DNA of 64,000 nucleotides from Pelomyxa schiedti. Taxonomy: Eukaryota > Protista > Evosea. Shown piece by piece: positions 14,587-31,275 of this stretch. Made by a program: the position numbers and the translations under genes. The stretch covers positions 1-64,000 of the forward strand of contig JAHLWZ010000790.1 in NCBI GenBank assembly GCA_020536535.1. The letters are read 5' to 3'. The notes beneath the pieces are model-generated. The model saw nothing but the letters and a program-made list of their open reading frames with translations, did not search any database and had not been told where the DNA came from. Numbering within the stretch: position 1 is the stretch's first letter; the number at the start of each line of letters is the position of its first letter.

Positions 14587-15669
14587 TTAGAAGAAATGGT
14601 CTCTGTTGGAATTTCTTGGAGTGGTGATTTTTTCCATGTTTTTGGTTATCAAATCGTGGAGAATGGCGTAAGTATTTCTGGCTCAGGTTAGTATGGAATC
14701 TTGTAGCAGAAAAGCGAACCTGAGTTCTCTGTATGCATAGCGCATGTTGATGTATTCCTTGCGGTCCAGTTCGATGATGCTCATACGGTAATCTGAGAGG
14801 TGAGGATATTTCTGGCACTATAACCACATAGTTAAGCAGAGCAAGTTGTTTCACAAAAGAGTAACCTTCACCACAAGTTTCCCTCTGGCAAGGTGATACT
14901 TGTATATATCTTCCATTGCGGTGTAGGCATTATCTTCAGCTCGTCCGAGCTCGCTTACTGTATCTTCCTGAATATCGACGCCTACAAAACATGAGTTTGT
15001 GTGAGCGTACTGGAAGCAAGCAGACCAAAATTGTTTCCATCCTCAATTCGAGGTATATTCAGCTGGATCCAGAGCTTCACACAACAAACAGTCTCTATCA
15101 TTACCAACAGTTCCTTCTTTAGTTCGGCTTGAAGGTCCATGACGTCCTGTTGTGTTTATCAGTCACTCAAGATTGCATAAAAGGGAGGGTGACCTGGTTG
15201 CATGGGATAACTAGATCACTTGACGCTGATGAGGGGACAGTCGAAGACCCTCCACTTTCTGGTTTGGCTGTGTTGTTATTAATAAATCAGCCCAATACTA
15301 TAAACAAACACACCCAGCCTCGGCTTCTTGGTTGGGTGAGGGCACTCGGAGGTCTCGTTAAAAATCGCCAGGGTCTCAGGGCACAGTCTTTCTTTGTACC
15401 TCGCAATAATTTGCTCCCCAGTATAAGAAAACCTCGGGTCTGTCTATAGAAAGTAAAAAAAAAAAAGGCATGCCACTCAGTCACATAAAAGAAGTCCTCA
15501 CAATGAAGGTGTTGTGCAGGGCGACAACTTTCTGTGGCATTTTGTCTCGCACTGCCTCGAGCGCATTCGCCCTCACATCATCTTGCATTTGGTTGATCTC
15601 AGCAAGCATTTGCTTTCGCTGTTGCAGTTGCGCTGCAGAGTGGGGGTCCGGCTTGCTCTTGGTCGCCAT
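14587..15669 (-). CDS. PSME3: Proteasome activator PA28/REG (11S), gamma-like
   Basis: MPQKVVALH in the N-terminal part; activation loop LNIPRIEDGNNFG|VDIQEDTVSELGRAED; DYRMSIIELDRKEY; RNTYAILHDLITKNMEKITTPR. Confidence 0.93.
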
Positions 15670-15797
15670 CTCCACACAGCCGATTTTTTGTAATTTCTGG
15701 TTAATTAATCTCTTATTGGCAACTGCAGATCTACTTTGACACCCTTCACAGCACTGGCAGTAATTCCCCTGCGCGTTGAGTTTGTTTGTCGTTCTAC

Positions 15798-16310
15798 ATG
15801 TCGGCAGGTTGCAGCACTCATTTCTCAAATATAAATGCACGAACGACACGTTCCGCCGCCACACCAAAGATCGTCGGAACAAAGAGAAAACCGTCGTCAC
15901 TGTTTGGGAGTCCAAGGGATGTTACATTGGACCCTCCCAAGCCGAAAGCAACCAGACTCGCTGCTACAAATCCGCCTCTACGCAACAAAAATGAGTGCCA
16001 GTCCGCCGACGTATCACCACATCCTGACGACGGCACCGAAAATGTGGCCACAACAGCGGGTGGATCACACGGCCTTTCGGAGGAGGAGAAGCTCAATGAG
16101 CTAGTGCGTGAAGTGGAGATAGAAGTGGTGGCCGAGATACGAAGACGCATTGGCAATTTCCAACCTACAAAGCATCGTAGGCGGGACCCCAAATTGCATG
16201 TACTAGTCGAGGCACCGAGTTTGGCCAACAAACCACAAAACAACCTCAACGACGCACAAACCAAACCACCAACTCAAGAGGATGACTTCATTGGACTTGG
16301 AAATTACTAG
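15798..16310 (+). CDS. Hypothetical, mostly disordered protein, divergent from PA28
   Basis: Single uninterrupted 170-aa ORF from ATG 15798 with a basic motif (KRK) and a short amphipathic helix (EEEKLNELVREVEIEVVAEIRRRI). No family recognised. Confidence 0.55.
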   Translation: MSAGCSTHFSNINARTTRSAATPKIVGTKRKPSSLFGSPRDVTLDPPKPKATRLAATNPPLRNKNECQSADVSPHPDDGTENVATTAGGSHGLSEEEKLNELVREVEIEVVAEIRRRIGNFQPTKHRRRDPKLHVLVEAPSLANKPQNNLNDAQTKPPTQEDDFIGLGNY

Positions 16311-16542: not shown

Positions 16543-19500
16543 TCACTGTAATCTGGTAAGGCAGTAGGGCTCTTGAAGTGGTGCCAGTGTGGTTATTGGG
16601 ACAATCTGCGCGACTTGGATGTAGCCTGATCCTGGGTAATCTGTGAACCTGTGTCGAGTTTTAGTCGGGAAATTGTGGGAGGCATGTAATTCTGTGATGG
16701 GCTTACTTGGCTGCTTTGAGTTTATCCCAAAGCCTGTGAGAGGAACCAAGGATCATAGACCTCAGCGAGACTGTGCAATCTCCCAGGAAGTCGGGTTCTC
16801 CATCAGGGTCATAGTCAAACACAGCTAAAGTCAGCTTCGTGTCAAGTCCCCCAATTGCCGCCACATCGACCACGAAGGCGCCAAAGGTTGGGCTGAGATC
16901 CTGTGTGTGAATCTCGCTTGTGAACACAGTCGCCTTATCAGTCCTGACGACCAGGAACGGATCTGTTGAGTTTGTTTGGTTTGGTGCGGATAGGAATTGT
17001 GGGAAGATACCAGAGAGTCCTGTGAGTGTGTCACTTCTGGGAAGGTCCGTTGCGTGAAGTGTTATCTGGTACCCTGGGATGTTAACAGTGCGAGGGACGC
17101 AAGACTCCACTGACACAGTGCCGAGCGCGGGCCTAATTATGGGTGAGCGTGTTGTATTATTGTTTATAATACAGGGGATTTTGGGGGTAATTTACTTAGG
17201 GTTGAGAGGATTTGGAATGGTGATGAGATCACGAGGCATTTTGACAGAGGCACGGTATCCTGGAATTGCCAATTGTCTCAAGCACATTGGAAGCTTCAGC
17301 CGGCATGTGTTGTACTTGGAGAAGCGAGAATCTGTTGAGAAGGAGAGTTTCATGTGGAACTGCGCATCAAGGCCACAGACTGCCTCGAACGGAATGACAA
17401 AGTCTAAAGCAGGGAAACGGAGTGCTGGGAGGATGCATTCACATCCGGTTGCGGTCACTGATTCGAGGCACACAGAGTAACCTGAGCAAAAAAGTTCAAT
17501 GAGAGTGAAGGAGAACTGGAACAGGAATACATGAAGAACCCTTGGGCACGGAATCAAGTTGGAATCTGACAACATACTCGGTTGCAGGAACATCTGGGGG
17601 CATAGAAGGAGGCAGTGGTGCCGCATTGGCCTTGAGCCCCCCACTGTTGAAATATACTGGGTTGCTGTTGTTTTGTTGTTTAAGTTAAAAGAGAAAATAA
17701 GGCATTGCTTGGTACTGTTTCTTCTTCCTCCCATTGATTACTGTGCCGGTCCAAGAGCCAAAGAGTAATTCCTGGTAACTACAAATCACTTTTCCGACGT
17801 TTTCTACTTTATGCTTGCCTTCGTTCCAACCAAAGAGGCGGAACTTGAGACATGTCAATAAAAGAAAGGAAGGTGTTGTTTACTTGGAAAATGCTTCGTG
17901 CAAGCAATGCACTCGGTACAAGTTTGCCTGGCCATACATTAACTGGCCTCCATTCAGGAGAAGCAGAGGATATCGCTTCACTACGATACAAAAATATCTG
18001 TGTGGTCTCAGGTGCTCTCAGCCAGATTTCAAACCAGAGGCCAGTGTCCATGTCAATCTTCAACCCTGATACACTGCGCATGTCAACTAGAGGGCAAAGG
18101 GAGTTGGGCATACTTCAAACTAATTCCCAGTGGAAGAATAAATGGAGTTGCAGTTGAAAGAAGTACGGATTTTGATACAATAAATCCGCCAGCTGATTTG
18201 AAAAGAGGAATAGGTATTTCTGGTTTAAGGCATTCAGTATGGGGTGAAAACAACCACTCCCGCATGGTTGATGTAAATCGTCCAATTAAATCATGTGTCC
18301 CATCCTATGTTTGGCCAAGACATGAGGAAAAACGCTTCGAAGCATAGGAAACCTTATCCCAGTTGTAACAATTCACAATGAATGGTGTATCCCACCCAGC
18401 AACTCTATCAGGAGACAATTCGAACGGTTCCCATGAAGGATTTACTTCATCGGCATCAATCTCAACATTGTAGACTTTGCTTCGGTAAACAAGAGCATAG
18501 CCTTCCTGCCCGGTGATGGGAGCAAGGATTTCGAAAAAGGGTGCTATTGTTTACTGATTAGATTTTGCAAATTGACACATAAATACTAGATCGTTTTTGA
18601 ATAAGCCCGCTTTTGGAGAGAGAACAGCCTGCAGGGTGGACCTGAATGGCCATAGGAAGAGTGCGACTGCACGTTGTATTGATAGGTGATACATTGTTAA
18701 CAACAAAAGCACCAGAACTTGTGTAACCCGGTCTAGGAAATGGTGAGTATTTTTTATTGAGAAGGTTGAAATACACTCTATGCTGATGGTTCTTGTTTAC
18801 AAGGCGTGTGGAAAAGGGACATGCAAAAGACCACTCCCGAAGCGTTGTTTTAAGTTTCCCAATTAAATCGTGATCACCTTTATCAGAGAAGTTCCAGACC
18901 CTACAATTTTTTTTGGTTTTTACGGGAAAAAAGTGTTCAAACCATATTGTAAACTGCCCGTCCATCCCCTTGACATCACTAAAACTCAGAGTAAGTGGTG
19001 CCCATGCAATATTATCTCCTTTACAAAGTTCTGTGGAATTGTCAAAATAAGTTTAAAACAAAGTGAAAAAGACATACCAGATCGGTACAACAGTTGTTTT
19101 GCTTTGTTATCGCCCTTGACTCGCACTTCAAAGAAAGGAACTGGAAACAGTTAATGAAAGTTATTCCTTTTTACTGATATGCCTTTTGCCCTCGTAATGG
19201 GGAAATGAAGCTTCACAGCAGAAGGGTGAACTGTAATACCAAGAGCCGAAATTGGTTCTTCTATGTATTGCGCAACTGTGACGATAGCGAATTTGAAACC
19301 CCCTGAGCTCTTATACCCAACGCTTTGTTTCTAAATGAGACAAAACAAGTTATATGAAGGGAAGTGAACCTTAGGATTTTGTTGGTATTTTTAAGAGCTC
19401 GAGTGAATGAACCAAGACATAGGTCACGAAAAGTGGTGATGAAGCTTCCTATCAAATCGTGGTGACCGTCAGAGTCCTACTTCAGTAAGTGCTGTTATAA

Positions 19501-22500
19501 ATAGTTTCTTTAATACCCAATCATAGCAACTAAGTTCCACAGGAACATCAAGTCCTCCAGCAAGTTGAAGGCTGTGAATATTTGAATGAGTTTGCTTTGG
19601 AAAAAACACACCTTAATGTAAAATCTTTCCATGAAGGACAGTCATTCTTAGAAATAACCTCAGAACGATATAAAAGTATCTTGTTAAGTCTTCGAATTTC
19701 AAAGAAAGGATCTATTCTTCACCTTAATCAAACATCAAAATAGGAAAACCCACCAGATTTGATGAGGCCACCGGCATCCTTATTTTCTAATTCAAACCCG
19801 GAGCAAGAAAGTTGAAGTGCAGCAGGATATTGCTTGTGGTATTCATTAAAAAGTTCTAACAAGAAAATGTACCCTCAAATCAGAGACAGTAATTGCAGAA
19901 TTATTAATAAGCAAAGCGCCAGGTCGCGTTGGTCTCAACCTGTGCTGAACTGTAAGATGGAAAGATTGCTTGATAGGAAGTAAACATATTCAATGTAGAC
20001 GGATCATTGAGCCCAACAAGATACGGACCAAACAGAACACAATCACGTATTGTAGTTTTGATATCCCCAATAAAAGCATGGGCTCCATTATCCCGGAAAT
20101 CGAAAACACTGATAGTGAAGGGGTTATCCACGCCTCCAATTTCCCTCAGCGACAGTGGAAAAGGTTGCCAATGTGGAGTGGAGTCTGAACCAACTTCACT
20201 CCGGTACATAACAACTGCTTGAGGTTCCCTTGGAAGGCAACATGTCACTTCAAAGAATGGTGCTAGAAATGTTGGCCAATGTAAATAGAACAAAGGTTAA
20301 CACACCAGAGACTGAAGAAATGGATGAAGCACAATTTAACTTTGCTCCCGAAAAGGTGAAGCAGTATGCTTCAGCGATAGAGGGGCGTACTTCACTGGGT
20401 AATGCCTGGATTGAATCAACAGAAAAGCAACCTCGGCTAAAGTGTGTCAAGGCAAAAGAATGACTGTTGGACAACAACCTTCCCAGAATATTTGGAGGTT
20501 TGTAAAGTCCGAGTTGGATATCTCCAAAAGACAGTTCCCGCAGTGTGGTCGTTGAACACCCGATTAAATCATGCCCGCCATCTGTTTGAGTAAGTAAGCT
20601 GCAAACGGTCACTGCTGCAACCATCATCAGCATCCCAAACGGATATTTGGAAAGGTGCGTCAAAAGGAATGTCAGACGTATTGATGGAAAAAGCCTTCCA
20701 AGATGGGTTCAAATTTTTGGGGATAATCTCAGATCGGTAAATTGTGATTGGAGTTGAAAATCCAGCTGGTTGTGCCGTGATCACAAAGAATGGGTCTGAT
20801 ATCATGCTGAGAAAATATAAGAACAAAAATTGTAAGTACCTGATTTTGCATGAATCCCAATATCCATTGCAGCCAACTTTCTACCACTCACGGAGAGTTG
20901 GAAAGCTGGGGAACTTTTCTGGCGTTGTGCTTCTCTTTCCAGAAGTTCTGGTTTACAAAAAGTGAAGCCACCGCTATTCAACCCAACTTTGGGACCCCTT
21001 CAATGGTTTAGTGGAGGCCAAGAACGAAAATCACAACTTAAGAGGCACAGTGCACCCATTTTGAATGAAATCAAATAAAGTAACTTCGGCCTCTCCAATT
21101 TTATCATGTCCGCCGTCTGTGATTGTATTTAAACGCTGAGAGTAAGGTAATGGGACTTGCCTGCATCCCAGTCCCACACAACCACAGAAAAGGGAGTGTG
21201 AAGCCCTCGAATATCAGCGAGGTTAAGTTCAAATGGAGCCCACTTAGGGTTCAAATCATTTTTCATTGCAACTGATCTGAGAGGGATTAAAAGTGGATTG
21301 CCAATGGGAAATCCACCTGTACAATGTAATGGGGTGAGTAAAACCAGCAGGCGTAGCTACAATCTTAAAGAAAGGATCTGTGTGAAAGTCATCACATGTG
21401 CGCCACACTCGCGAATGAAACCTGATTTGCCTGCAACATCTTTTCGGGACAACTTGGAAGCGTAACACTGAACACTAAATGCAGGTGAAGGTTCATCTGT
21501 TGGAATTTTATTTCTAATAAATCTGTGTATATATCCGGGCCTAGATTCTACATTGTTTACGCAAAAGGCAGCATTGCTTTTGTTTTGGGTTGATGTATTA
21601 GAATTGTCGAGGAATGGAAAAAAAGCACCTGTCAGTAACTTGAAGTTTCTTGGTCAGAGCAAAACGGAAGGGACCGAATGTGAGATCCCGGAATGTTAAT
21701 GAGCAATCCCCAACTTTGTGGTGATCTCCATCTTTTGCCCGATTGTACACCCTAGGGCAATATTAGAGTGCAGTTACCAGGATTAAACTCACTTCAAAGT
21801 GAAGAATGAGTCAATCCCATTTACATCCGAAAGGTTAATGGGGATTGGTGCCCATGTGCCACTGCTGTTATTGTAGTTCTTGCAGACTTCACTTCGGTAG
21901 AGCATCTTACTGTCACTTATCCAGAGTTCGAAAAATGGTTCTAACATCAAGTGAGAGGACAAGAAAAGGAAAGCAAATCCTTTCACAAAAAAAGAAAGAT
22001 ACGAACTTGTCTTCCCCAGTAGGGTGGTGACTTTTGCAACTCCAGTGTGAAGAAGGTACGCTGGAGACATTGGTTTTACTTGAGTATACTCAAGACCTTC
22101 TAAGCAAGATACACCGAAGGCACCTTGACTGCAAAAGTGGGAGACTGTTCAATTGACCTAGCGACATACCACAAGATTGCTCCTTTAGCCTTTAATTCAA
22201 TTCTATGCTCCCCAAAAGTCCATTCTCTCATAGTTATTGTCGATTTCCCAATTAAGTCATGTCCTCCATCCTTGTTATTTTTGAATTAATTCACTTTTGT
22301 TTTTGGAAAGGTACTTCATCAAAGTCATAAACAAAGATGTCAAATGGTGAATCTAAATCACCAATCACTTCCATTGACAGCTCAAAAGGTTTCCAGGTGG
22401 GATTGAGATTTCTTGAAATAACTGGAGGAGCATTGGTGATGTGTTGAGAACGAAAGCTGATAACCTTCACTGCGGTAAACAGTTATATATTTCTGGGGGC

Positions 22501-25500
22501 ACCCTGGCGGAGCTTTGGTTCTTATTTCAAAAAAGGGATCTAATGATTTGTAAGATTTCGTTGGAGATTACCATCAACCAGAAGAGGCAGTGACATCCTT
22601 CCTTGCAAGCTTCGCGCCAAAAGGAAACATACGATATGCACTGAACCGTTTTTTGAGAACTCGGTCAGGCAAAGGAGATACTGTATCAATACAAAAAGCG
22701 CCAGCATCAGTACTAAGGATAGCACTTGTGAGTCCTTCGCGGAAAGGACCGAAACTCCAAGAGCGGAGAGTGGTGTGTAGACTCCCAATAAGTTTGTGCT
22801 CACCATCAGGATGATAGTTCCATACATGGATGGTAAAAAGGGTATCTATGCCTCGGACATCTTTTTCCCACTTCCTCAATTTTTAGGCAGATGTAAATGA
22901 AGAATACCGTCGACATTGAGAGAAAAGGAGTCCCATCTGGGTTGTCTACCGCCTTCCTTGGCAACTTCACTACGGTAAATTGTTATGGCTGTCTTGGAGC
23001 CAGGAGGAGACGCCTTGAGCTCAAAGAATGTGGGTCCTGGAAAAAGAAGGGATTATAAAGTGCAGATATACAAATATATTCAAACCTGTTAATAGAGGCA
23101 ACTTATCTGCAGATACAGAAATCTGGAAAGCTGCAGGTATTTCTCTCACTTGTGAAAATGAAAGAGGCGTAACTTCATCAACTGAGAATGCACCTTGATT
23201 CAGGCCGCCCTCCAGCAACTCCTGTTGGTAGGGGCCAAATGTCCATTCACTGTTTGTGTGAGCTAAAAAAAAAAAAAGATGTCAGGGATCCTACCGTAAA
23301 GTTGTTTGCAGGGAACCAATTCTGTCATGCCCTCCATCACGATCCTGTTGTCATAAGTCTTTGGGAAAGGGTACAAGTTGCATACCCAATCATAAACAAC
23401 AACAGTAAAGGGGGAATCGAGACCTCCCACCATAGAGACATTAAACTCAAAGTCATCCCAGACTGGTTCCAGACATTTCATCACAACATTAGAACGATGG
23501 AGGAGTATAGGCTTCTCTGCTCCAGGAGGAACTACAAATACCTCAAAAAACGGATCTAAGTGCGGTTAGGTAAAGAATGTGCATGATAGGTGGACCACCA
23601 GAGGAAAGAGACACATCTTTCCGGGGAAGTTTCAGTGCACTAGCTTTTATTCTGTATGCTGCAGGTGCTAATTTTATGAATTGTTGAGACAAGGGCATAA
23701 CAGAGTCAACGGAAAAAGCCCCTGATGACCTGAAATTCTTGTAAGGAACACAACTGGGGACTGGACAGTAGGGGTGTACTACATAATAGAAGATGTGCTT
23801 GTTCTGACCGAGAAAGAATATGGTGAGAAAAGCCATTCACGCATAATTGTTTGTGCTGTTCCAATGAGGTCATGTCCTCCATCTTTACTCATGTTATGTA
23901 AATCTCCTTCGAAAAGTAGAGAAAACCTTTATCCCAGTCATATATCGAAACTGTGAAAGGTGTGTCTAAATTTGTAATGTCACTTAAATTTAATGTGAAG
24001 GGTTTCCAGCAGGGGTTTAGGTTTCTCATGATGACTTCTGAGCGGTAAAGGGTTATTTTACTCTTTCCTGGCGGTTCTGCCTTAATCTCGAAGAAAGGAT
24101 CTGCATTAGAAGTTTAAACTCAGAGAAGAATTGGGAGGAAATACCTGAGGAGCCACTTATGTCTTTTCGATCAAGTTTCCTGGCACTTGGAGATATTTGA
24201 AAAGCTACTGGAAGAGGCCTTCGATACTGTGGAGCCTCAGCCGGAGGAATGAGGAAAACGCGATCGACAGAAAAAGCTCCTGAAGACTGGTATCCAATAC
24301 TGCGCAAGTTGAACATAACTCATATTTACCCTCAAATGATGAGTTACCAATTCTTGAGGTTGGGGTTAATTAGAGCTTGTTGATATGAGCCAAATGTCCA
24401 TTCACGGAAGGTTGTTTCAAGTTCTCCAATAAACTCATGGGCTCCATCTAGGACAAAATAAAATTTATGTGTACCAGTTTTTGATCTCACCTGCATCCCA
24501 ATCATATACACTAATCTTAAAGGGCGAGTCTACACCACCAATATCCTCAAGGAATAGTACAAACGGCTTCCAGTCTTTTTTGGTTTTTGTTTTGTTAGAG
24601 GGTTTTAGGGAGACTGACTGGAAGACCAGGGTTGAGATTCTTCATAATGACTTCACTTCTATAAAGTGTAATTGGGTGTGTGAAGCCTGGAGGTTGTCCT
24701 GAAACAACAAAAAAGGGGTCACTTTTGGAAATAGGGCCATCCATATTTGTCAGTTTTTGAGCAGAGGTTTTAACCTGCGAATCTTGGTATTTTTACATAA
24801 AAGGAAAACGAATGCCAAACCTCAACGGCAATAGGAACAATCTTTTTTTCAGCTGGCTCGTAGACTGGTGTAATGTCATCACAAGAGAAGGCACCTGAGC
24901 TGTCATAACCAGGCCTTATTGGGGTTTAAAAAACGCATCAAAGTAGGAAAAATGACTCACAAGCCCACTTTACTAGGGTTAATAAGGGCTGACCGGTATG
25001 GTCCAAAGCTGGAAGGAAGAATTACATTGAGTACAACTTAGAAAAGACGTACCACCACTCTCGCACAGTCATTGTGCAACGTCCAACCTAGGATGAAAAC
25101 TTAGAACAAGTACGCGGATATGTGCAAACCAAGTCATGTCCACCATCAGCATCCCAATCCTAAGTTCACATGAGAGAAGAGAGGGAAAAAAAAAGGAATA
25201 CCATGACTTCAATTTTAAAAGGTGAATCCAAGTCTAAAAAGACAACTAAGCCAAAAAAATAGAGAAAAGGCAAGGTAAACGAACCTCCAATTAAAGACAT
25301 ATCCAGAGTAAAATAGCCCCAAACAGGATTGTCAGCTTTCATAACCACTGGAGACCTGTACACAGTGATCTCTTTATCGTATCCCGGTGGAGTAGCCCTG
25401 ATAGTGAAGAAAGGATCTGAAAGGTTTACTTCAGTTCAGTTCAGTGCCGAGGAAAAGTTAACCAGAAGGTTTTGCCCCAGTTGGTCCAAAGTCGAGGCGG

Positions 25501-28500
25501 GCTATTTTGAAACCACTGGCATGAATACGATACGAAGGAGCATAAGTGGGTAGAGTAACATGTCCAATTGGTTCGACACGGTCGACTGAAAAGGAACCCA
25601 TGGAACTACTGTCCTTGTATAGAGCTTGTTGGTAACTCCCTGCCGATAGGATTAGGAACCAAATGATGAAATAGTAGAAACCAAAGCTCCATTCTCGGAG
25701 AGTTGTTAACAGTTCTCCAATTACCTGTTACCTAGTGAGTTGCATGCCACACCAACCTGCAACGTACATCGTGGCCACCATCCCGATCAAAATCGTAAAC
25801 TTGAATTCTAAAAGGAGCATCAATATCACCAATGGCTTCCACACTCAAGTCAAATGGATTCCACTGGGGAGCTAATTTTTTGTAAACCACTTCGGATCTA
25901 AGTTCTGTGAATGAAGCAGGTTTTTTGTGAGCTCATACCTATAAAGAGTAATTTCACCACGGAATCCAGGTGGTCTAGCTTTTATGACAAAGAATGGATC
26001 AGATGAAGCCAAAGGGCCATCCATCCGAGCAAGCTTTGCTGCACTACAAAATACTCGCAGTCCCGCAGGCGTTGGAGGTACATCAAGTGGAGCAATTGCT
26101 TCAGCACTTTCAACTCCAAAGCAGCCTTGACTACTTTGGTGATTACATATAGTGTGAAAGACAGCATAACTAACTTGTTTCCATCACGCTCAAGGCCCTG
26201 TTCATACCATGACCACTGTAAATCCCGCCAAACTATATTGAGCTTTCCAATTAAGTCATGTGTCCCATCTAAATATGACTTAGTAAAAAAGATATGACGG
26301 AAAGAAAAGAAAACCTTTATCCCAATCATAGACCTATTTTTGGATAAGTAAATATAGAAGAAAATTCTGTAGTACTTACAAGTACATCAATGGTGTCATA
26401 AGGATTTTTAAGAAGGGTAAGAGGCAGATAAAAGGAGTCCCATCGCGGTTTCTGTGTTTTTCTCAATACTTCAGAGCTGAAATGTTGTTATGGTTAAGAG
26501 AGATTGGAGAATGAGTAGAACCGGTAAATTGTTATTTCTTTCCCAACAGTAGGAGAGAATTTGCGAATCACAAAGAACGGGTCACAAGACATGGTGGAAA
26601 CATCCATTATTGGCAATTTCTTAGCGTAGCAAGTCATTCTACAATTATCAGCAAGTCTTCTCCCCACAGCTACTTCTTACCGTGTAGCGGGGGGAAGCGT
26701 GTCTGAAGGAAATGTCAGATCCAGCAGAGGAACAACTTTATCAATGTTGAAGGACCCGGCACTTTCTCCACTTGGTTTGTATATCCCAGAGGAGAACCAG
26801 CTGAATGTCAAATCTCGAGCAACCATGGAGAAAGAACCTGATGATGTTTTAGGTGTTTGACAAAAGTGGGAAAAAAGTACCCATCATATCATGGCTTCCA
26901 TCTGCATCCTTTTTTTTTGTTAGTCTGAAGAAGGATCTGAGAATGTGTACCCAGTCAAAGACTCTAAAGGATGCTTTTGTATCAAGACCGTAGTCTAACC
27001 TCAAAATGAAGGGTTCAAAAACAGGAGCAAGTGATTGCATTACAATCCCCGATTTGTATATTTTTAAATCACTTTGCCTCCCATCAATATTAGCTTGTAC
27101 CCAAACTTCGAAGAAGGCATCTTGCAACTGTTAGGAGCACTTTTCCTACAAGATTGCAACCTGTTTTCAGAAGTGGATTGTCCGCACGTTCCAGCTTGGA
27201 TATGCTTGTACTCAATTGTAATCCTTTCAGCCTGACCAACGCAGGTGCTTCACATGGAACAATGTCTTTAATTCCAAACGACCCATTCCTAAAATATTGT
27301 GCACAAGAAATAAGAAACAAGTAAAGTACGTTGAAGTTCCAGCTCTGATTGCTTCTTCAAACCAGCTCCATTGCAACTCACTAAGAGACACTGAAACTAT
27401 TCCAATGGAATCGTGGGTGCCATCTTTGTCATAATCAAAAACCTCTGTTCCTTATATTGGACACATTTTAAACGGTACTGGTTGTACCAATGATAAATGT
27501 ATCTTGAGGTGCAGTAAACATATCCAGGGGAACTATGCATTCAGCCCACGATGGAGAGAAAGTCTCCAGTAACAATCAGAATTAAGAATGAAAATTGTCA
27601 AGCAAATCAACCTTTGGGTAAACCTCACTACGATATAGGGTAACATTGTTCTTTTTCATCACAAAAAAGGGGTCTATTGACATGGTGGACACATCTTTGA
27701 TAGGTAGTTTTCGCGCATAACACTTCATCCTTTGCATGTAAGTGCATTCAAAATTTGAATACAAAGTTGCAGTACTTGAGAGCAGGTGGAACAGTTAATT
27801 TCACACGGTGGAGATCATCAATAATTGTGTATCCAGAAACAATAAAGCTGCCTGATGTCCCTCCACTTTTCTTAATTGCACTTGAAAACCAACTAAATGT
27901 GAATTCCCGTGGTGTACATGTAACTTGGCCATAGTATTCGTGATCCCCTACAGGGGTCAATAGAAAGGAACTAAGGCAAGGCAGTACCGTCTTTATTGTA
28001 GTCATACACTTGAATGGCAAGTTTAGCATCGAACCCTTTATCCAGTGGTATTTGGAATGGCTTAAACTCTGAAATTAACTTGAGATCAAGGATACTAGAA
28101 GTTTTTTACTTGGGTTGAGATTGCCCATTACCACTTCTGACTTGTACACTGGAGGCCAATCAGAACAAAATGCAACATAAATTAAATACCCTTTGACAAA
28201 CCCGTTGGGGTATCAACAGCAACAGTAAAGAACGCGTCTTATGTAGAGTTAAAGTAAGTAAAGGTAGTAATGGCTTGAGTACCACACGATCCAACTAAAC
28301 CAAGGGATCTTACAAGATTTTCACATCCACAGTTTATTTCTAGTGCCGAGGCGGATGCTAAGGCAGCTCGTTCCACCCCGGGCTAACGGCCAGTTAACAG
28401 TTGAAGTAAAGGGAATCATAAGTCACCTCCACACTGGCGACATGGAAAACCCCGTTAGAATCAGGAATATTGTATTTGACTACAAGAGATCCAGATGATG

Positions 28501-31275
28501 AACATTTCCTATCCATGGTGTTAGAGTTTTCATTAATACTGTATCTACCCACGATGCTGGAAGAAGTGGGTACTGAAAAGGCCCTGCAAGAAGTTCATTC
28601 AAGGTGGTAAAATACTTTCCAATGAGTCTGTGATCACCCTTCTTCTCCCAGTCCCACACTGACTAAAAATATAATTGATACATTCTTTTTTTAGGTAGTG
28701 AATAGTACCAGCTCAAAAGGTTCGTTGATGCCACCAATTTGGGCTATGTTTATGGTAAATGAATCCCAGTTGGGGCTATTGGTATTCACTAAGTGCTCTG
28801 AGCGATACAGCAAGAGGTTATCCCGTCTTACTTCAAAAAAAGGATCAGCACGCTCCTATTCTAATTATTAAAAAGAAAAAAAAAGGAAAGTAGATATCAA
28901 ACCAGAGACCCAGGAATGGACAATTTCTTCCCGGTTGCTTTGATCTGGAAAGCCACAGTGGAAGTATTATAAGGTGGTGTATAGGTAGTTTCAGCAACTA
29001 TTGAATCACATATAAAGTTCCCAACACTAGTTAAGCTAGTTACAGTTTATTTGGCTGCTGTGGGAATTACATGTTGGACCCAGCATAAATTGGGAAATTC
29101 AAATTTGGGAAGCGGCGCAGTGTCCATGTGTCAAAGGTAGTAGTGCCTATAAGGCTATGACTTCCATCAGCATCCCAGTCATACACATCAATCTGAGTGA
29201 GTAAGGAAGAAGTTACAGTAAAGTTGAAGTAACCATTAATAGTTCCCTTGCACTGCAATCCCATAAGGAAGAAGGCAAAGAAAACTGTGGCCAATCTGGA
29301 GAAGTTGTACTTTTGCACACTGGAGAGCGATAGATGGTTGCCAGACGAGTGGAAATTACAAAGAATGGATCTAATCAATGTTACCCATGAGTCCAATGCA
29401 ACAAGAAGAAACCTGGTCTCCGAGCAATCATGTCTCTCCGAAGACCAGAAGCACGGAATTTGAGAGAAAAAGAAACTGGGTCTGCTGCAAACATATTGTC
29501 CTGTGGTATTCCCACTTGACATGAAACAACAGTAAAATAACCAGAATTATTGTAACCAACATTTTTCCTAAAAACCACTGGTGAAAAATGCAGTTGTAAC
29601 TTCCATTCATACACTTTTCTATCAAGCCGTACAGGGTAGGGAAACCCAGGGAATTTTAATAAAGACAAAGTTGTATCAAAGTGACCGATTTCTTCCCAGT
29701 CTCCATCCAGGTCAAAATCATAGACTGTTATCCTTGTAGGGCTTTCCCATCCTATTAGGAATAATTAGGTTGCGTACTCAAATGCACTAACCTGTCATTC
29801 CAGGAATTTCTCTAATGTCAAGCGTAAAATCGTGCCAAGTGCAATCAAGAGATTTGCTTACAATCTCACTTTTATAAATTGTATACCCTGCCACATTTAT
29901 TGTAAAAAATGGGTCTGACTTCCCAAGAGGTCCATCTTTTTTATCAAGATGTTTAGCTGCACACCGGAATCTTGGAAAAATTAGATATTGGTGTGTCTGT
30001 GTCATACATACATGTAAGCAAGAGGCTCAGGCGGTATTGGTGCATTTTGTTGTTGTGCACTTACCACTTTCAACGTACTGTTTTTATGTGGCAGGCTGAG
30101 GGTTTTATTTTTTTCCAGTAAACTCCTCACCTAGTAATAGTCAGTTCACAACTCTTTTTGCAATGTGGAAATACCTCAAATGAAGTAAAACCCATGTAGT
30201 CATGACCACCATCCTTGTCCCACTAAGATACGTTAGTGAAATTTTAGGGTTGAGATAGAACATACATCAAAGCAATCAATCTTTAGTGCACCACCTGGGC
30301 CCCCTGACTGGTGTAGCCAGAGGCGGAATGGAGCCCAATCTTATGGTATCAAAAGTTCAGAAAAATGTTGACTTTGAAGGTGCAAAACCTGGATCTAAAG
30401 TTTGTCTAATAACCTCTGACCTGTGAAGCACCCGACCATAATCTGTTGATAACAGAAAGAACGGATCTGCAGGAAGAGTTAATTGGCAAATGAGGACAGG
30501 AAACTTACCACTTTTCCTGAAAGGTCCCATATCCATTTTTGGTAGTTTCCGACCACTTAGTTGCAAATCAATAGCGGTGTTAGTCTCGTTTCTTTGGGAG
30601 AGGGGACCCTTTCATCCATTTTGAGCTTGTTTTTCCACAAACAAACAAAAAATACCACTGAAGGGGTAGCATCAACTCTTCTTGTGTTTCCAATAACAGA
30701 GAGCCATTTTGACTTTGGTTCCCCCTATACATTTCCATACACTTAAAAACAAAAACAAAAACAAAAACAAAAAAGGTTCATAAATGCAATGATACATTCG
30801 CAGCGGCCAGGATCCTTGACCTTCCAGATACACAAACTTCGAAAGAATCCCAACGTAATCCAGTGCCGTTCCTCGGCTCAACAACCGACGCCGCCGAAAC
30901 GTCGAAAGCGTCGAACGGCGGCCTCCCCCCAACCGCCTCTGCCGTCTGCCCGTCGAACAACAGCAGTTGCATCGGCGCCTGCTGGCTCCCAATTGTGGGA
31001 GTCGCGCCGCCGCCCCCACCACCCGCGCCGATCTGCATCACCGCGCCGTAGCATCGCTTCCACCGCCTCGGGTTGGGCTCGCGCCTCGCCGCCGACGCCG
31101 ACAACGAGGACGCGGCGCCCAGCTTGGCCGCCGCGTCCACCAGCTTGGCCGCCGTCCGCGTGGCCGCCCCCGTGCGCCTCACCAGCAACGGCCCCTGCAC
31201 CACGATCGTTGGCGCCGGGCCCCCTGAAGTGGCCGTGGGCGTGGCAACCGCTGCTGCTGTGTCTCTGGTTGCCAT
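16543..31275 (-). CDS. Giant PH + ~25x copine-type C2 tandem-repeat protein (estimated ~3,500-3,700 aa, many introns)
   Basis: N-terminal PH domain (VVQGPLLVRR, RRWKRCY, LLLF, SKWLSVI) splices in frame to repeated C2 units with (S)DPFF...YRSEV...LNP.W.PF...V(Y/W)DWD.DG.HDLIG...T.REW.FG...SSG.F.V. Frame continuity checked by eye at several junctions; no intergenic-like gap seen. Confidence 0.85.

What the first reader, a model, noticed from the sequence alone, without database searches (positions are those of the whole stretch)
16543..31275. Giant PH + ~25 tandem copine-type C2 domain protein without vWA or membrane anchor
Seen: one minus-strand gene where a PH domain is followed by C2 units about every 500-700 nt. 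The DPFF-type strand lies near 30465, 29915, 29370, 28845, 28235, 27675, 27120, 26580, 25998, 25415, 24720, 24100, 23555, 23030, 22538, 21940, 21376, 20795, 20260, 19710, 19138, 18540, 18035, ~17475 (degenerate) and 16960. Known: copines have 2 C2 + vWA, extended synaptotagmins/tricalbins 3-5 C2 and ferlins up to ~7, the latter two with a membrane anchor. I see no vWA, SMP or TM segment here. Inference: a soluble ~400 kDa multivalent Ca2+/phospholipid-binding chain that could act as a membrane tether, patch or repair scaffold in a large amoeba. This is my best candidate for an undescribed system in this window.
Basis: partly seen in the sequence, partly recalled or inferred. Interest (0 to 1): 0.85.

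Follow-up and report, generated by a model that had tools for sequence, protein, structure and literature searches.

The report
Giant 25-C2-domain amoeba membrane-binding protein
An anaerobic amoeba has a single gene for a ~400 kDa protein that is almost entirely a chain of 25 calcium/membrane-binding C2 domains, about three times as many as in ferlins, and similar unstudied proteins occur in several other single-celled eukaryotes.

Summary
Window 31275..16543 (minus strand) is one gene of Pelomyxa schiedti with 87 short introns. NCBI's model Pelo_9897 ('hypothetical protein', 3601 aa) maps onto it exactly, and 80 of 87 intron positions are shared with a 55%-identical paralogue. The protein is a degenerate PH-like domain plus 25 copine-type C2 units (24 by profile, one by predicted fold). 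There is no vWA, SMP, Fer/DysF or transmembrane segment. Fifteen or sixteen units keep the Ca2+-binding aspartates, and the pattern of loss is conserved in the paralogue. The genome has four such genes, two without PH; this scan noted those three paralogues before. The architecture also occurs in Pyxidicula (complete transcript, PH + 26-27 C2) and on a metagenome contig (PH + ~28 C2). Shorter PH-poly-C2 proteins occur in Carpediemonas and Thecamonas. I found no paper describing the family. Most likely it is a soluble, Ca2+-triggered, high-avidity binder and cross-linker of anionic membranes, working like ferlins or copines. It belongs to neither family. The cellular role is inferred only. Read-level splicing could not be tested here.

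The parts
16543..31275 (-). Whole gene (Pelo_9897): 88 exons, 87 introns of 39-71 nt, ~3600 aa, ~399 kDa
   Evidence: exact map of P0155; independent DP; 80/87 intron positions shared with paralogue Pelo_11264
30689..31209 (-). Divergent PH-like domain (aa ~23-172) with Ala-rich and Gly-rich inserts; the basic beta2 arginine position is Cys
   Evidence: ESM Atlas PH neighbours; alignment to PH of homologues; weak hhalign E 0.008, probability 4.9%; no Pfam hit
28998..30605 (-). C2 units 1-3; Ca2+ aspartates intact; units 1 and 2 group with units 1 and 2 of Pyxidicula
   Evidence: AlphaFold pLDDT 83-96 for units 1-2
27813..28986 (-). C2 units 4-5; Ca2+ ligands partly lost, as in the paralogues
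23155..27798 (-). C2 units 6-13; Ca2+ ligands intact (unit 7 intact only with my alternative splicing at 26951/26908, which matches the paralogue)
19270..23167 (-). C2 units 14-20; 14, 16 and 19 have lost Ca2+ ligands, 15, 17, 18 and 20 are intact
17606..19240 (-). C2 units 21-23; Ca2+ ligands lost
17090..17579 (-). Degenerate unit 24: C2-like strand pattern by prediction, no acidic loops; an equivalent unit sits at the same penultimate place in the paralogues, Pyxidicula and Rhizamoeba
16582..17086 (-). Terminal C2 unit 25; Ca2+ ligands intact; followed by about 12 residues and the stop, with no transmembrane tail
   Evidence: (PF00168 E 1e-8)

Best explanation
A real, soluble poly-C2 protein of an undescribed protist family that works as a Ca2+-switched, high-avidity binder and cross-linker of anionic membranes. 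Shown (sequence level): one gene, 25 copine-type C2 units spaced ~125-150 aa apart with short linkers, no anchor, no enzyme domain; 15-16 units carry the loop-1 and loop-3 aspartates and nearly all of these have an aromatic residue in loop 3. From knowledge of copines and PKC/synaptotagmin C2: such loops bind 2-3 Ca2+ at micromolar levels and then dock on phosphatidylserine-type lipids. Inferred: when Ca2+ rises locally (wound, phagocytic cup, vacuole fusion), many units engage at once, so binding is steep and tight. The chain is long enough to touch two bilayers or to close up on one as ferlins do, and so gathers vesicles or holds a membrane edge. The Ca2+-blind units at fixed positions act as spacers or protein-binding modules. 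The PH-like domain is an optional targeting module. About 0.85 for Ca2+-dependent membrane binding; about 0.5 for the cross-linking/tethering role as the main job.
For: Copine BON1 is the best solved relative by sequence and for the N-terminal model by fold; ferlins and BON1 top the fold search of the C-terminal model. The aspartate pattern is kept in 15/24 aligned units here, 15/24 in Pelo_11264, 16/24 in Pelo_10634 and 16/26 in Pyxidicula. Unit order and the loss pattern are conserved 1:1 with Pelo_11264 at 47-74% identity. Array length converges on 25-28 in Pelomyxa, Pyxidicula and contig L020 although the middle units were reshuffled. Copine C2 chemistry: PMC10968396. Ferlin ring closure on membranes: PMC12264198.
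Against: There is no localisation, binding or knock-down data for any member. The AlphaFold models do not fix the arrangement of the units (pTM 0.56-0.58). Some arrays (Phalansterium 2/18, Pyxidicula P0016 3/13) have lost most aspartates, so a long array need not be Ca2+-driven. RNA support for this gene is only a word share of 0.20 and 0.17 against 0.53 expected for full exon cover.
Confidence: 0.5

Rival explanations
1. A constitutive structural scaffold: a long beta-sandwich chain lining the cortex or a vacuole, where length and unit-specific partners matter more than a Ca2+ switch.
For: Units have individual identities kept between paralogues. Mean identity among units is only 32%. Nine of 25 units are Ca2+-blind in a conserved pattern, and some relatives have lost nearly all aspartates.
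Against: About two thirds of the units in the closest full-length relatives keep the full aspartate set, which suggests selection for Ca2+ binding. There is no actin-binding, coiled-coil or dimerisation domain in Pfam.
Confidence: 0.25
2. A single-membrane Ca2+ sensor/adaptor or Ca2+ buffer, like a multiplied copine: it translocates to one membrane and recruits partners or soaks up Ca2+, without bridging membranes.
For: The units are copine-type. Smaller amoebozoan relatives combine four such C2 units with C1, PH or proline/glutamine-rich tails, typical of adaptors.
Against: There is no effector or vWA domain to carry a signal. A 400 kDa chain is a costly way to sense or buffer Ca2+ (inference).
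Confidence: 0.15
3. A polyprotein cut into small C2 modules that act separately.
For: Linkers are short and rich in Pro, Ala, Ser and Thr. Calpain release of a C-terminal C2 fragment is known for dysferlin (own knowledge).
Against: No repeated cleavage motif is visible in the linkers. Units are divergent and position-specific, not homogenised.
Confidence: 0.07
4. An annotation artefact: several short C2 genes joined by gene prediction.
For: Read-level joints could not be seen here. NCBI splits the C650 paralogue.
Against: No gap longer than 71 nt lies between exons. 80/87 intron positions are shared with the paralogue. A transcriptome-derived ORF of 4016 aa in Pyxidicula and single uninterrupted ORFs of 1824 aa and 2429 aa in other genomes have the same build.
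Confidence: 0.03

Closest known systems
Copines (CPNE1-9, Arabidopsis BON1, Dictyostelium CpnA)
   Same: Soluble; the same C2 subtype (best PDB hit by sequence and fold; copine clusters top the Atlas shape search, though at weak TM ~0.28); Ca2+ aspartates; short inter-C2 linkers.
   Different: 25 C2 units instead of 2; no vWA/Copine domain; N-terminal PH-like domain.
Ferlins (dysferlin, myoferlin, otoferlin)
   Same: Large multi-C2 protein mixing Ca2+-binding and Ca2+-blind C2 domains; top fold hits for the four C-terminal units.
   Different: Ferlins have up to eight C2 domains, Fer/DysF modules and a C-terminal transmembrane helix (PMC12264198); none of these extra parts is present here, and the units are copine-like.
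Extended synaptotagmins/tricalbins and MCTPs
   Same: Several C2 domains in series that act at membranes.
   Different: No SMP or PRT_C domain and no membrane hairpin or helices; five to eight times as many C2 domains.
Uncharacterised database proteins: Pyxidicula EP01125 P016135, Rhizamoeba EP01130 P008101, Carpediemonas KAG9393611, Thecamonas AMSG_10679, Phalansterium EP01116 P022497, Trichomonas XP_001302514
   Same: Arrays of the same C2 type; PH in front in Pyxidicula, Carpediemonas and Thecamonas.
   Different: Only Pyxidicula and Rhizamoeba share the array ends with this gene. The others are not colinear (9-18 detected units) and may be separate expansions. None has a name beyond 'C2 domain' or 'hypothetical'.

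Membership tests
C2 domain (PF00168), copine-type | Profile match and eight-stranded sandwich with loop aspartates | tested here: met
Copines | Exactly two N-terminal C2 domains | tested here: not met
   25 units
Copines | C-terminal vWA/Copine domain (PF07002) | tested here: not met
   no hit at E<=1 on P0155, whereas it is detected in P0141; the protein ends ~12 aa after unit 25
Copines | Ca2+-dependent phospholipid binding | not testable with these tools
   ligand residues present in 15-16 units; binding not assayed
Ferlins | C-terminal transmembrane anchor | tested here: not met
   hydropathy max 1.63, not at the C-terminus
Ferlins | FerI/FerA/FerB/DysF domains | tested here: not met
   no Pfam hit; 90% of the chain is covered by C2 units
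Extended synaptotagmins/tricalbins | SMP lipid-transfer domain plus N-terminal membrane hairpin | tested here: not met
MCTP | C-terminal transmembrane region and PRT_C | tested here: not met
PH domain | PH fold at the N-terminus | tested here: inconclusive
   Atlas 0.91 with all ten best family hits PH/clan; the homologues have Pfam PH; but no Pfam hit, hhalign probability 4.9%, pLDDT ~30
PH domain, phosphoinositide-binding type | Basic beta1-beta2 motif with the key arginine | tested here: not met
   the arginine of Pyxidicula and Thecamonas aligns to Cys here; motif definition from own knowledge
PIP2-binding C2 (PKC-alpha type lysine cluster) | Lysine pair equivalent to PKC-alpha K209/K211 (PMC3999146) | tested here: inconclusive
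   units have R/K then mostly E at what I take to be these positions; the equivalence rests on my recall of the PKC-alpha sequence, not on a displayed alignment

The most novel reading that the evidence does not exclude
These proteins are an ancient, unrecognised class of soluble Ca2+-activated membrane tether or wound-patching polymer of phagotrophic protists, a functional counterpart of ferlins built from copine units. The PH + long-array plan would go back at least to the common ancestor of Tubulinea and Evosea, and possibly further (apusomonads, fornicates), with selection keeping about 25-28 units.
Probability: 0.3. Interest if true: 0.85.

Novelty: new variant of a known kind. Interest (0 to 1): 0.66.

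Why it matters
The characterised multi-C2 proteins I could check stop at about eight domains, and the larger ones are membrane-anchored. A soluble chain of 25-28 C2 domains, kept across distant amoebae with conserved ends and a conserved mix of Ca2+-binding and Ca2+-blind units, is a new design. It points to an unstudied Ca2+-triggered membrane process in protists, such as wound sealing or vacuole handling. It also offers a natural series (4, 9, 15, 18, 25-28 units) for testing how C2 valency sets the Ca2+ threshold, avidity and membrane bridging.

Tried and rejected
These lie inside the intron 28902-28856. My own joined spliced model was used only inside local scripts and was not searched against databases; database searches used exon references or public protein ids. 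PH by Pfam, hhalign and AlphaFold: negative or weak. Weak Pfam hits on P0155 (PI3K_C2, Gmad2, DUF4528, FG-GAP_3) are below cut-off and overlap C2 units; rejected. Regular C2A/C2B alternation: identity by lag is flat, 0.33-0.37; only units 5-8 and 9-11 look like pair duplications. A ciliary role (C2CD3/RPGRIP1L-like) was rejected because the closest full-length relatives are in Tubulinea, which lack flagella (own knowledge). A role tied to giant cell size is weakened by small flagellates with 11-15-unit arrays. Literature: searches for tandem/giant C2 proteins in protists and for the named genera gave no description, and the genome paper never mentions C2 domains. The library lacks most subscription journals. 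Absence from Dictyostelium, Entamoeba or Acanthamoeba is not shown: none appeared among the long hits I identified, but the searches are clustered or word-limited.
Full report
Observation. A self-trained exon-intron search gave one stop-free frame across the region. Single exons hit Pfam C2.

Identity of the gene. A profile built from exon references was run against 1.84 billion representatives and returned long multi-hit proteins. A follow-up search found Pelo_9897 of Pelomyxa schiedti, P0155. It maps exactly onto the window from the same start to the same stop, with 87 introns of 39-71 nt, 76 of them identical to mine. That genome was annotated with Augustus, PASA and EVM using transcript data (PMC8887013). 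The paralogue Pelo_11264, 55% identical, shares 80 of the 87 intron positions, which supports the model independently. One NCBI splice looks wrong: in unit 7 my alternative (donor 26950, acceptor 26909) restores the loop-3 motif seen in the paralogue.

Expression. Two single-cell RNA runs hold 0.20 and 0.17 of the sampled words of 22000-28000, where complete exon cover would give about 0.53. This fits expression but does not prove continuity. My own joined model was not searched against databases.

Anatomy. The protein is 3601 aa, 399 kDa. A unit profile finds 24 units, E 4e-17 or better; Pfam passes 20. The gap between units 23 and 25 is predicted with the same strand and helix order as the neighbours, giving 25 units. 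There is no vWA, SMP, Fer/DysF or PRT_C hit and no convincing hydrophobic helix. The closest solved relative is the copine BON1, by sequence and by fold for units 1-2. Ferlins and BON1 lead for the last four units. The N-terminal 170 residues are PH-like by language-model features and by position against homologues with clear PH. They fail Pfam, are weak in hhalign and fold poorly, and the key basic arginine is replaced.

Calcium sites. Fifteen aligned units have all four core aspartates, sixteen with the corrected unit 7. Units 4, 5, 14, 16, 19, 21, 22, 23 and 24 have lost some or all, and the same units are affected in Pelo_11264. Almost all intact units have Trp, Phe or Tyr within the loop-3 DxD. 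In PKC-alpha these aspartates and the K209/K211 PIP2 site are separable functions (PMC3999146). The lysine pair seems not to be kept here, though that equivalence is from my own knowledge. Copine C2 domains bind two or three Ca2+ at 1-10 micromolar and then anionic lipids (PMC10968396).

Family in this genome. Three further arrays lie on contigs C812, C800 and C650. Pelo_11264 is colinear unit for unit, at 47-74% identity. Pelo_10634 shares units 1-10 and the last units but has four copies of unit 12. The C800 and C650 genes start directly before C2-1, with no PH. Sixteen units of the window gene share a phase-1 intron in the same aspartate codon, as expected from tandem duplication of an intron-bearing unit, although parallel gain is not excluded. 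This scan had already noted three other poly-C2 genes in this genome.

Family elsewhere. Pyxidicula operculata has a transcript-derived 4016-aa protein with PH and 26-27 detected units. Its first and last units match ours, including the degenerate penultimate unit, while the middle is rearranged. Rhizamoeba and Arcella have fragments. Metagenome contig L020 carries PH followed by about 27 units plus the degenerate one. Carpediemonas (PH + 14-15 units), a 47%-identical relative in GCA_002919055, Thecamonas (PH + at least 11), Phalansterium (18) and Trichomonas (9) have arrays that are not colinear with ours; several Phalansterium units group with each other. A long array with these ends therefore probably predates the split of Tubulinea and Evosea. 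A single origin beyond Amoebozoa is possible but not shown. The tree was a quick FastTree on 130 columns, and only small clades are supported.

How it most likely works. Shown: a soluble chain of copine-type C2 units, two thirds of them with Ca2+ ligands, without an enzyme or anchor. From established C2 chemistry: Ca2+-dependent docking on anionic membranes (about 0.85). Inferred: many units engaging together give steep, tight binding, and the chain can bridge two bilayers or close up on one, as ferlins do on Ca2+ and lipid binding (PMC12264198). It would then gather vesicles or stabilise membrane edges at wounds, cups or vacuoles (about 0.5). Rivals: constitutive scaffold 0.25, single-membrane sensor or buffer 0.15, cleaved polyprotein 0.07, annotation artefact 0.03. 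The predicted models do not fix how the units pack (pTM 0.56-0.58).

Comparison and novelty. It works like copines and ferlins by inference, but fails the defining tests of both, and of E-Syts and MCTPs. Ferlins have up to eight C2 domains and a transmembrane anchor. The proteins sit in public databases only as 'hypothetical' or 'C2 domain', and five literature look-ups found no description, within a library that lacks most subscription journals. Verdict: real, a new variant of a known kind, and an undescribed family with an extreme architecture; function untested. Interest 0.66.

Noticed in passing
window 26881-27000: The NCBI model Pelo_9897 probably mis-splices C2 unit 7; donor 26950 / acceptor 26909 restores the loop-3 motif seen in the paralogue.
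   Followed up: partly
G000:C650 ~14.2-29.3 kb (L017-L019): A fourth poly-C2 gene (about 26 units, no PH). The only NCBI protein I found for it is a C-terminal 1210-aa piece (Pelo_8290), so the annotation seems to split it.
   Followed up: partly
window 14590-15670, minus strand: Proteasome activator PA28 gene directly downstream (PF02252, E 8e-11 on one exon).
   Followed up: yes
window 15786-16310, plus strand: Uninterrupted ~170-aa ORF converging on the 3' end of the C2 gene; no Pfam hit.
   Followed up: partly
P0014, P0021, P0036, P0019, P0029 (Physarum, Pyxidicula, Flabellula, Protostelium, Nolandella): Smaller amoebozoan proteins with four C2 units of the same type, some with PH or C1-PH in front and often proline/glutamine-rich ends; possible small relatives of the giants.
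   Followed up: partly
P0015 (Protostelium nocturnum): EF-hand pair + 6 C2 + 3 LIM domains in one 1749-aa protein.
   Followed up: no
L023:264-8818 (Logan SRR23998775): Another array of about 21 shorter C2-like units (~110 aa period) filling a whole 8.8-kb contig; organism unknown.
   Followed up: no
P0012 (Thecamonas AMSG_10679): Only 39% of the 3282 aa is covered by the unit profile; the long unmatched stretches may be further degenerate C2 units.
   Followed up: no
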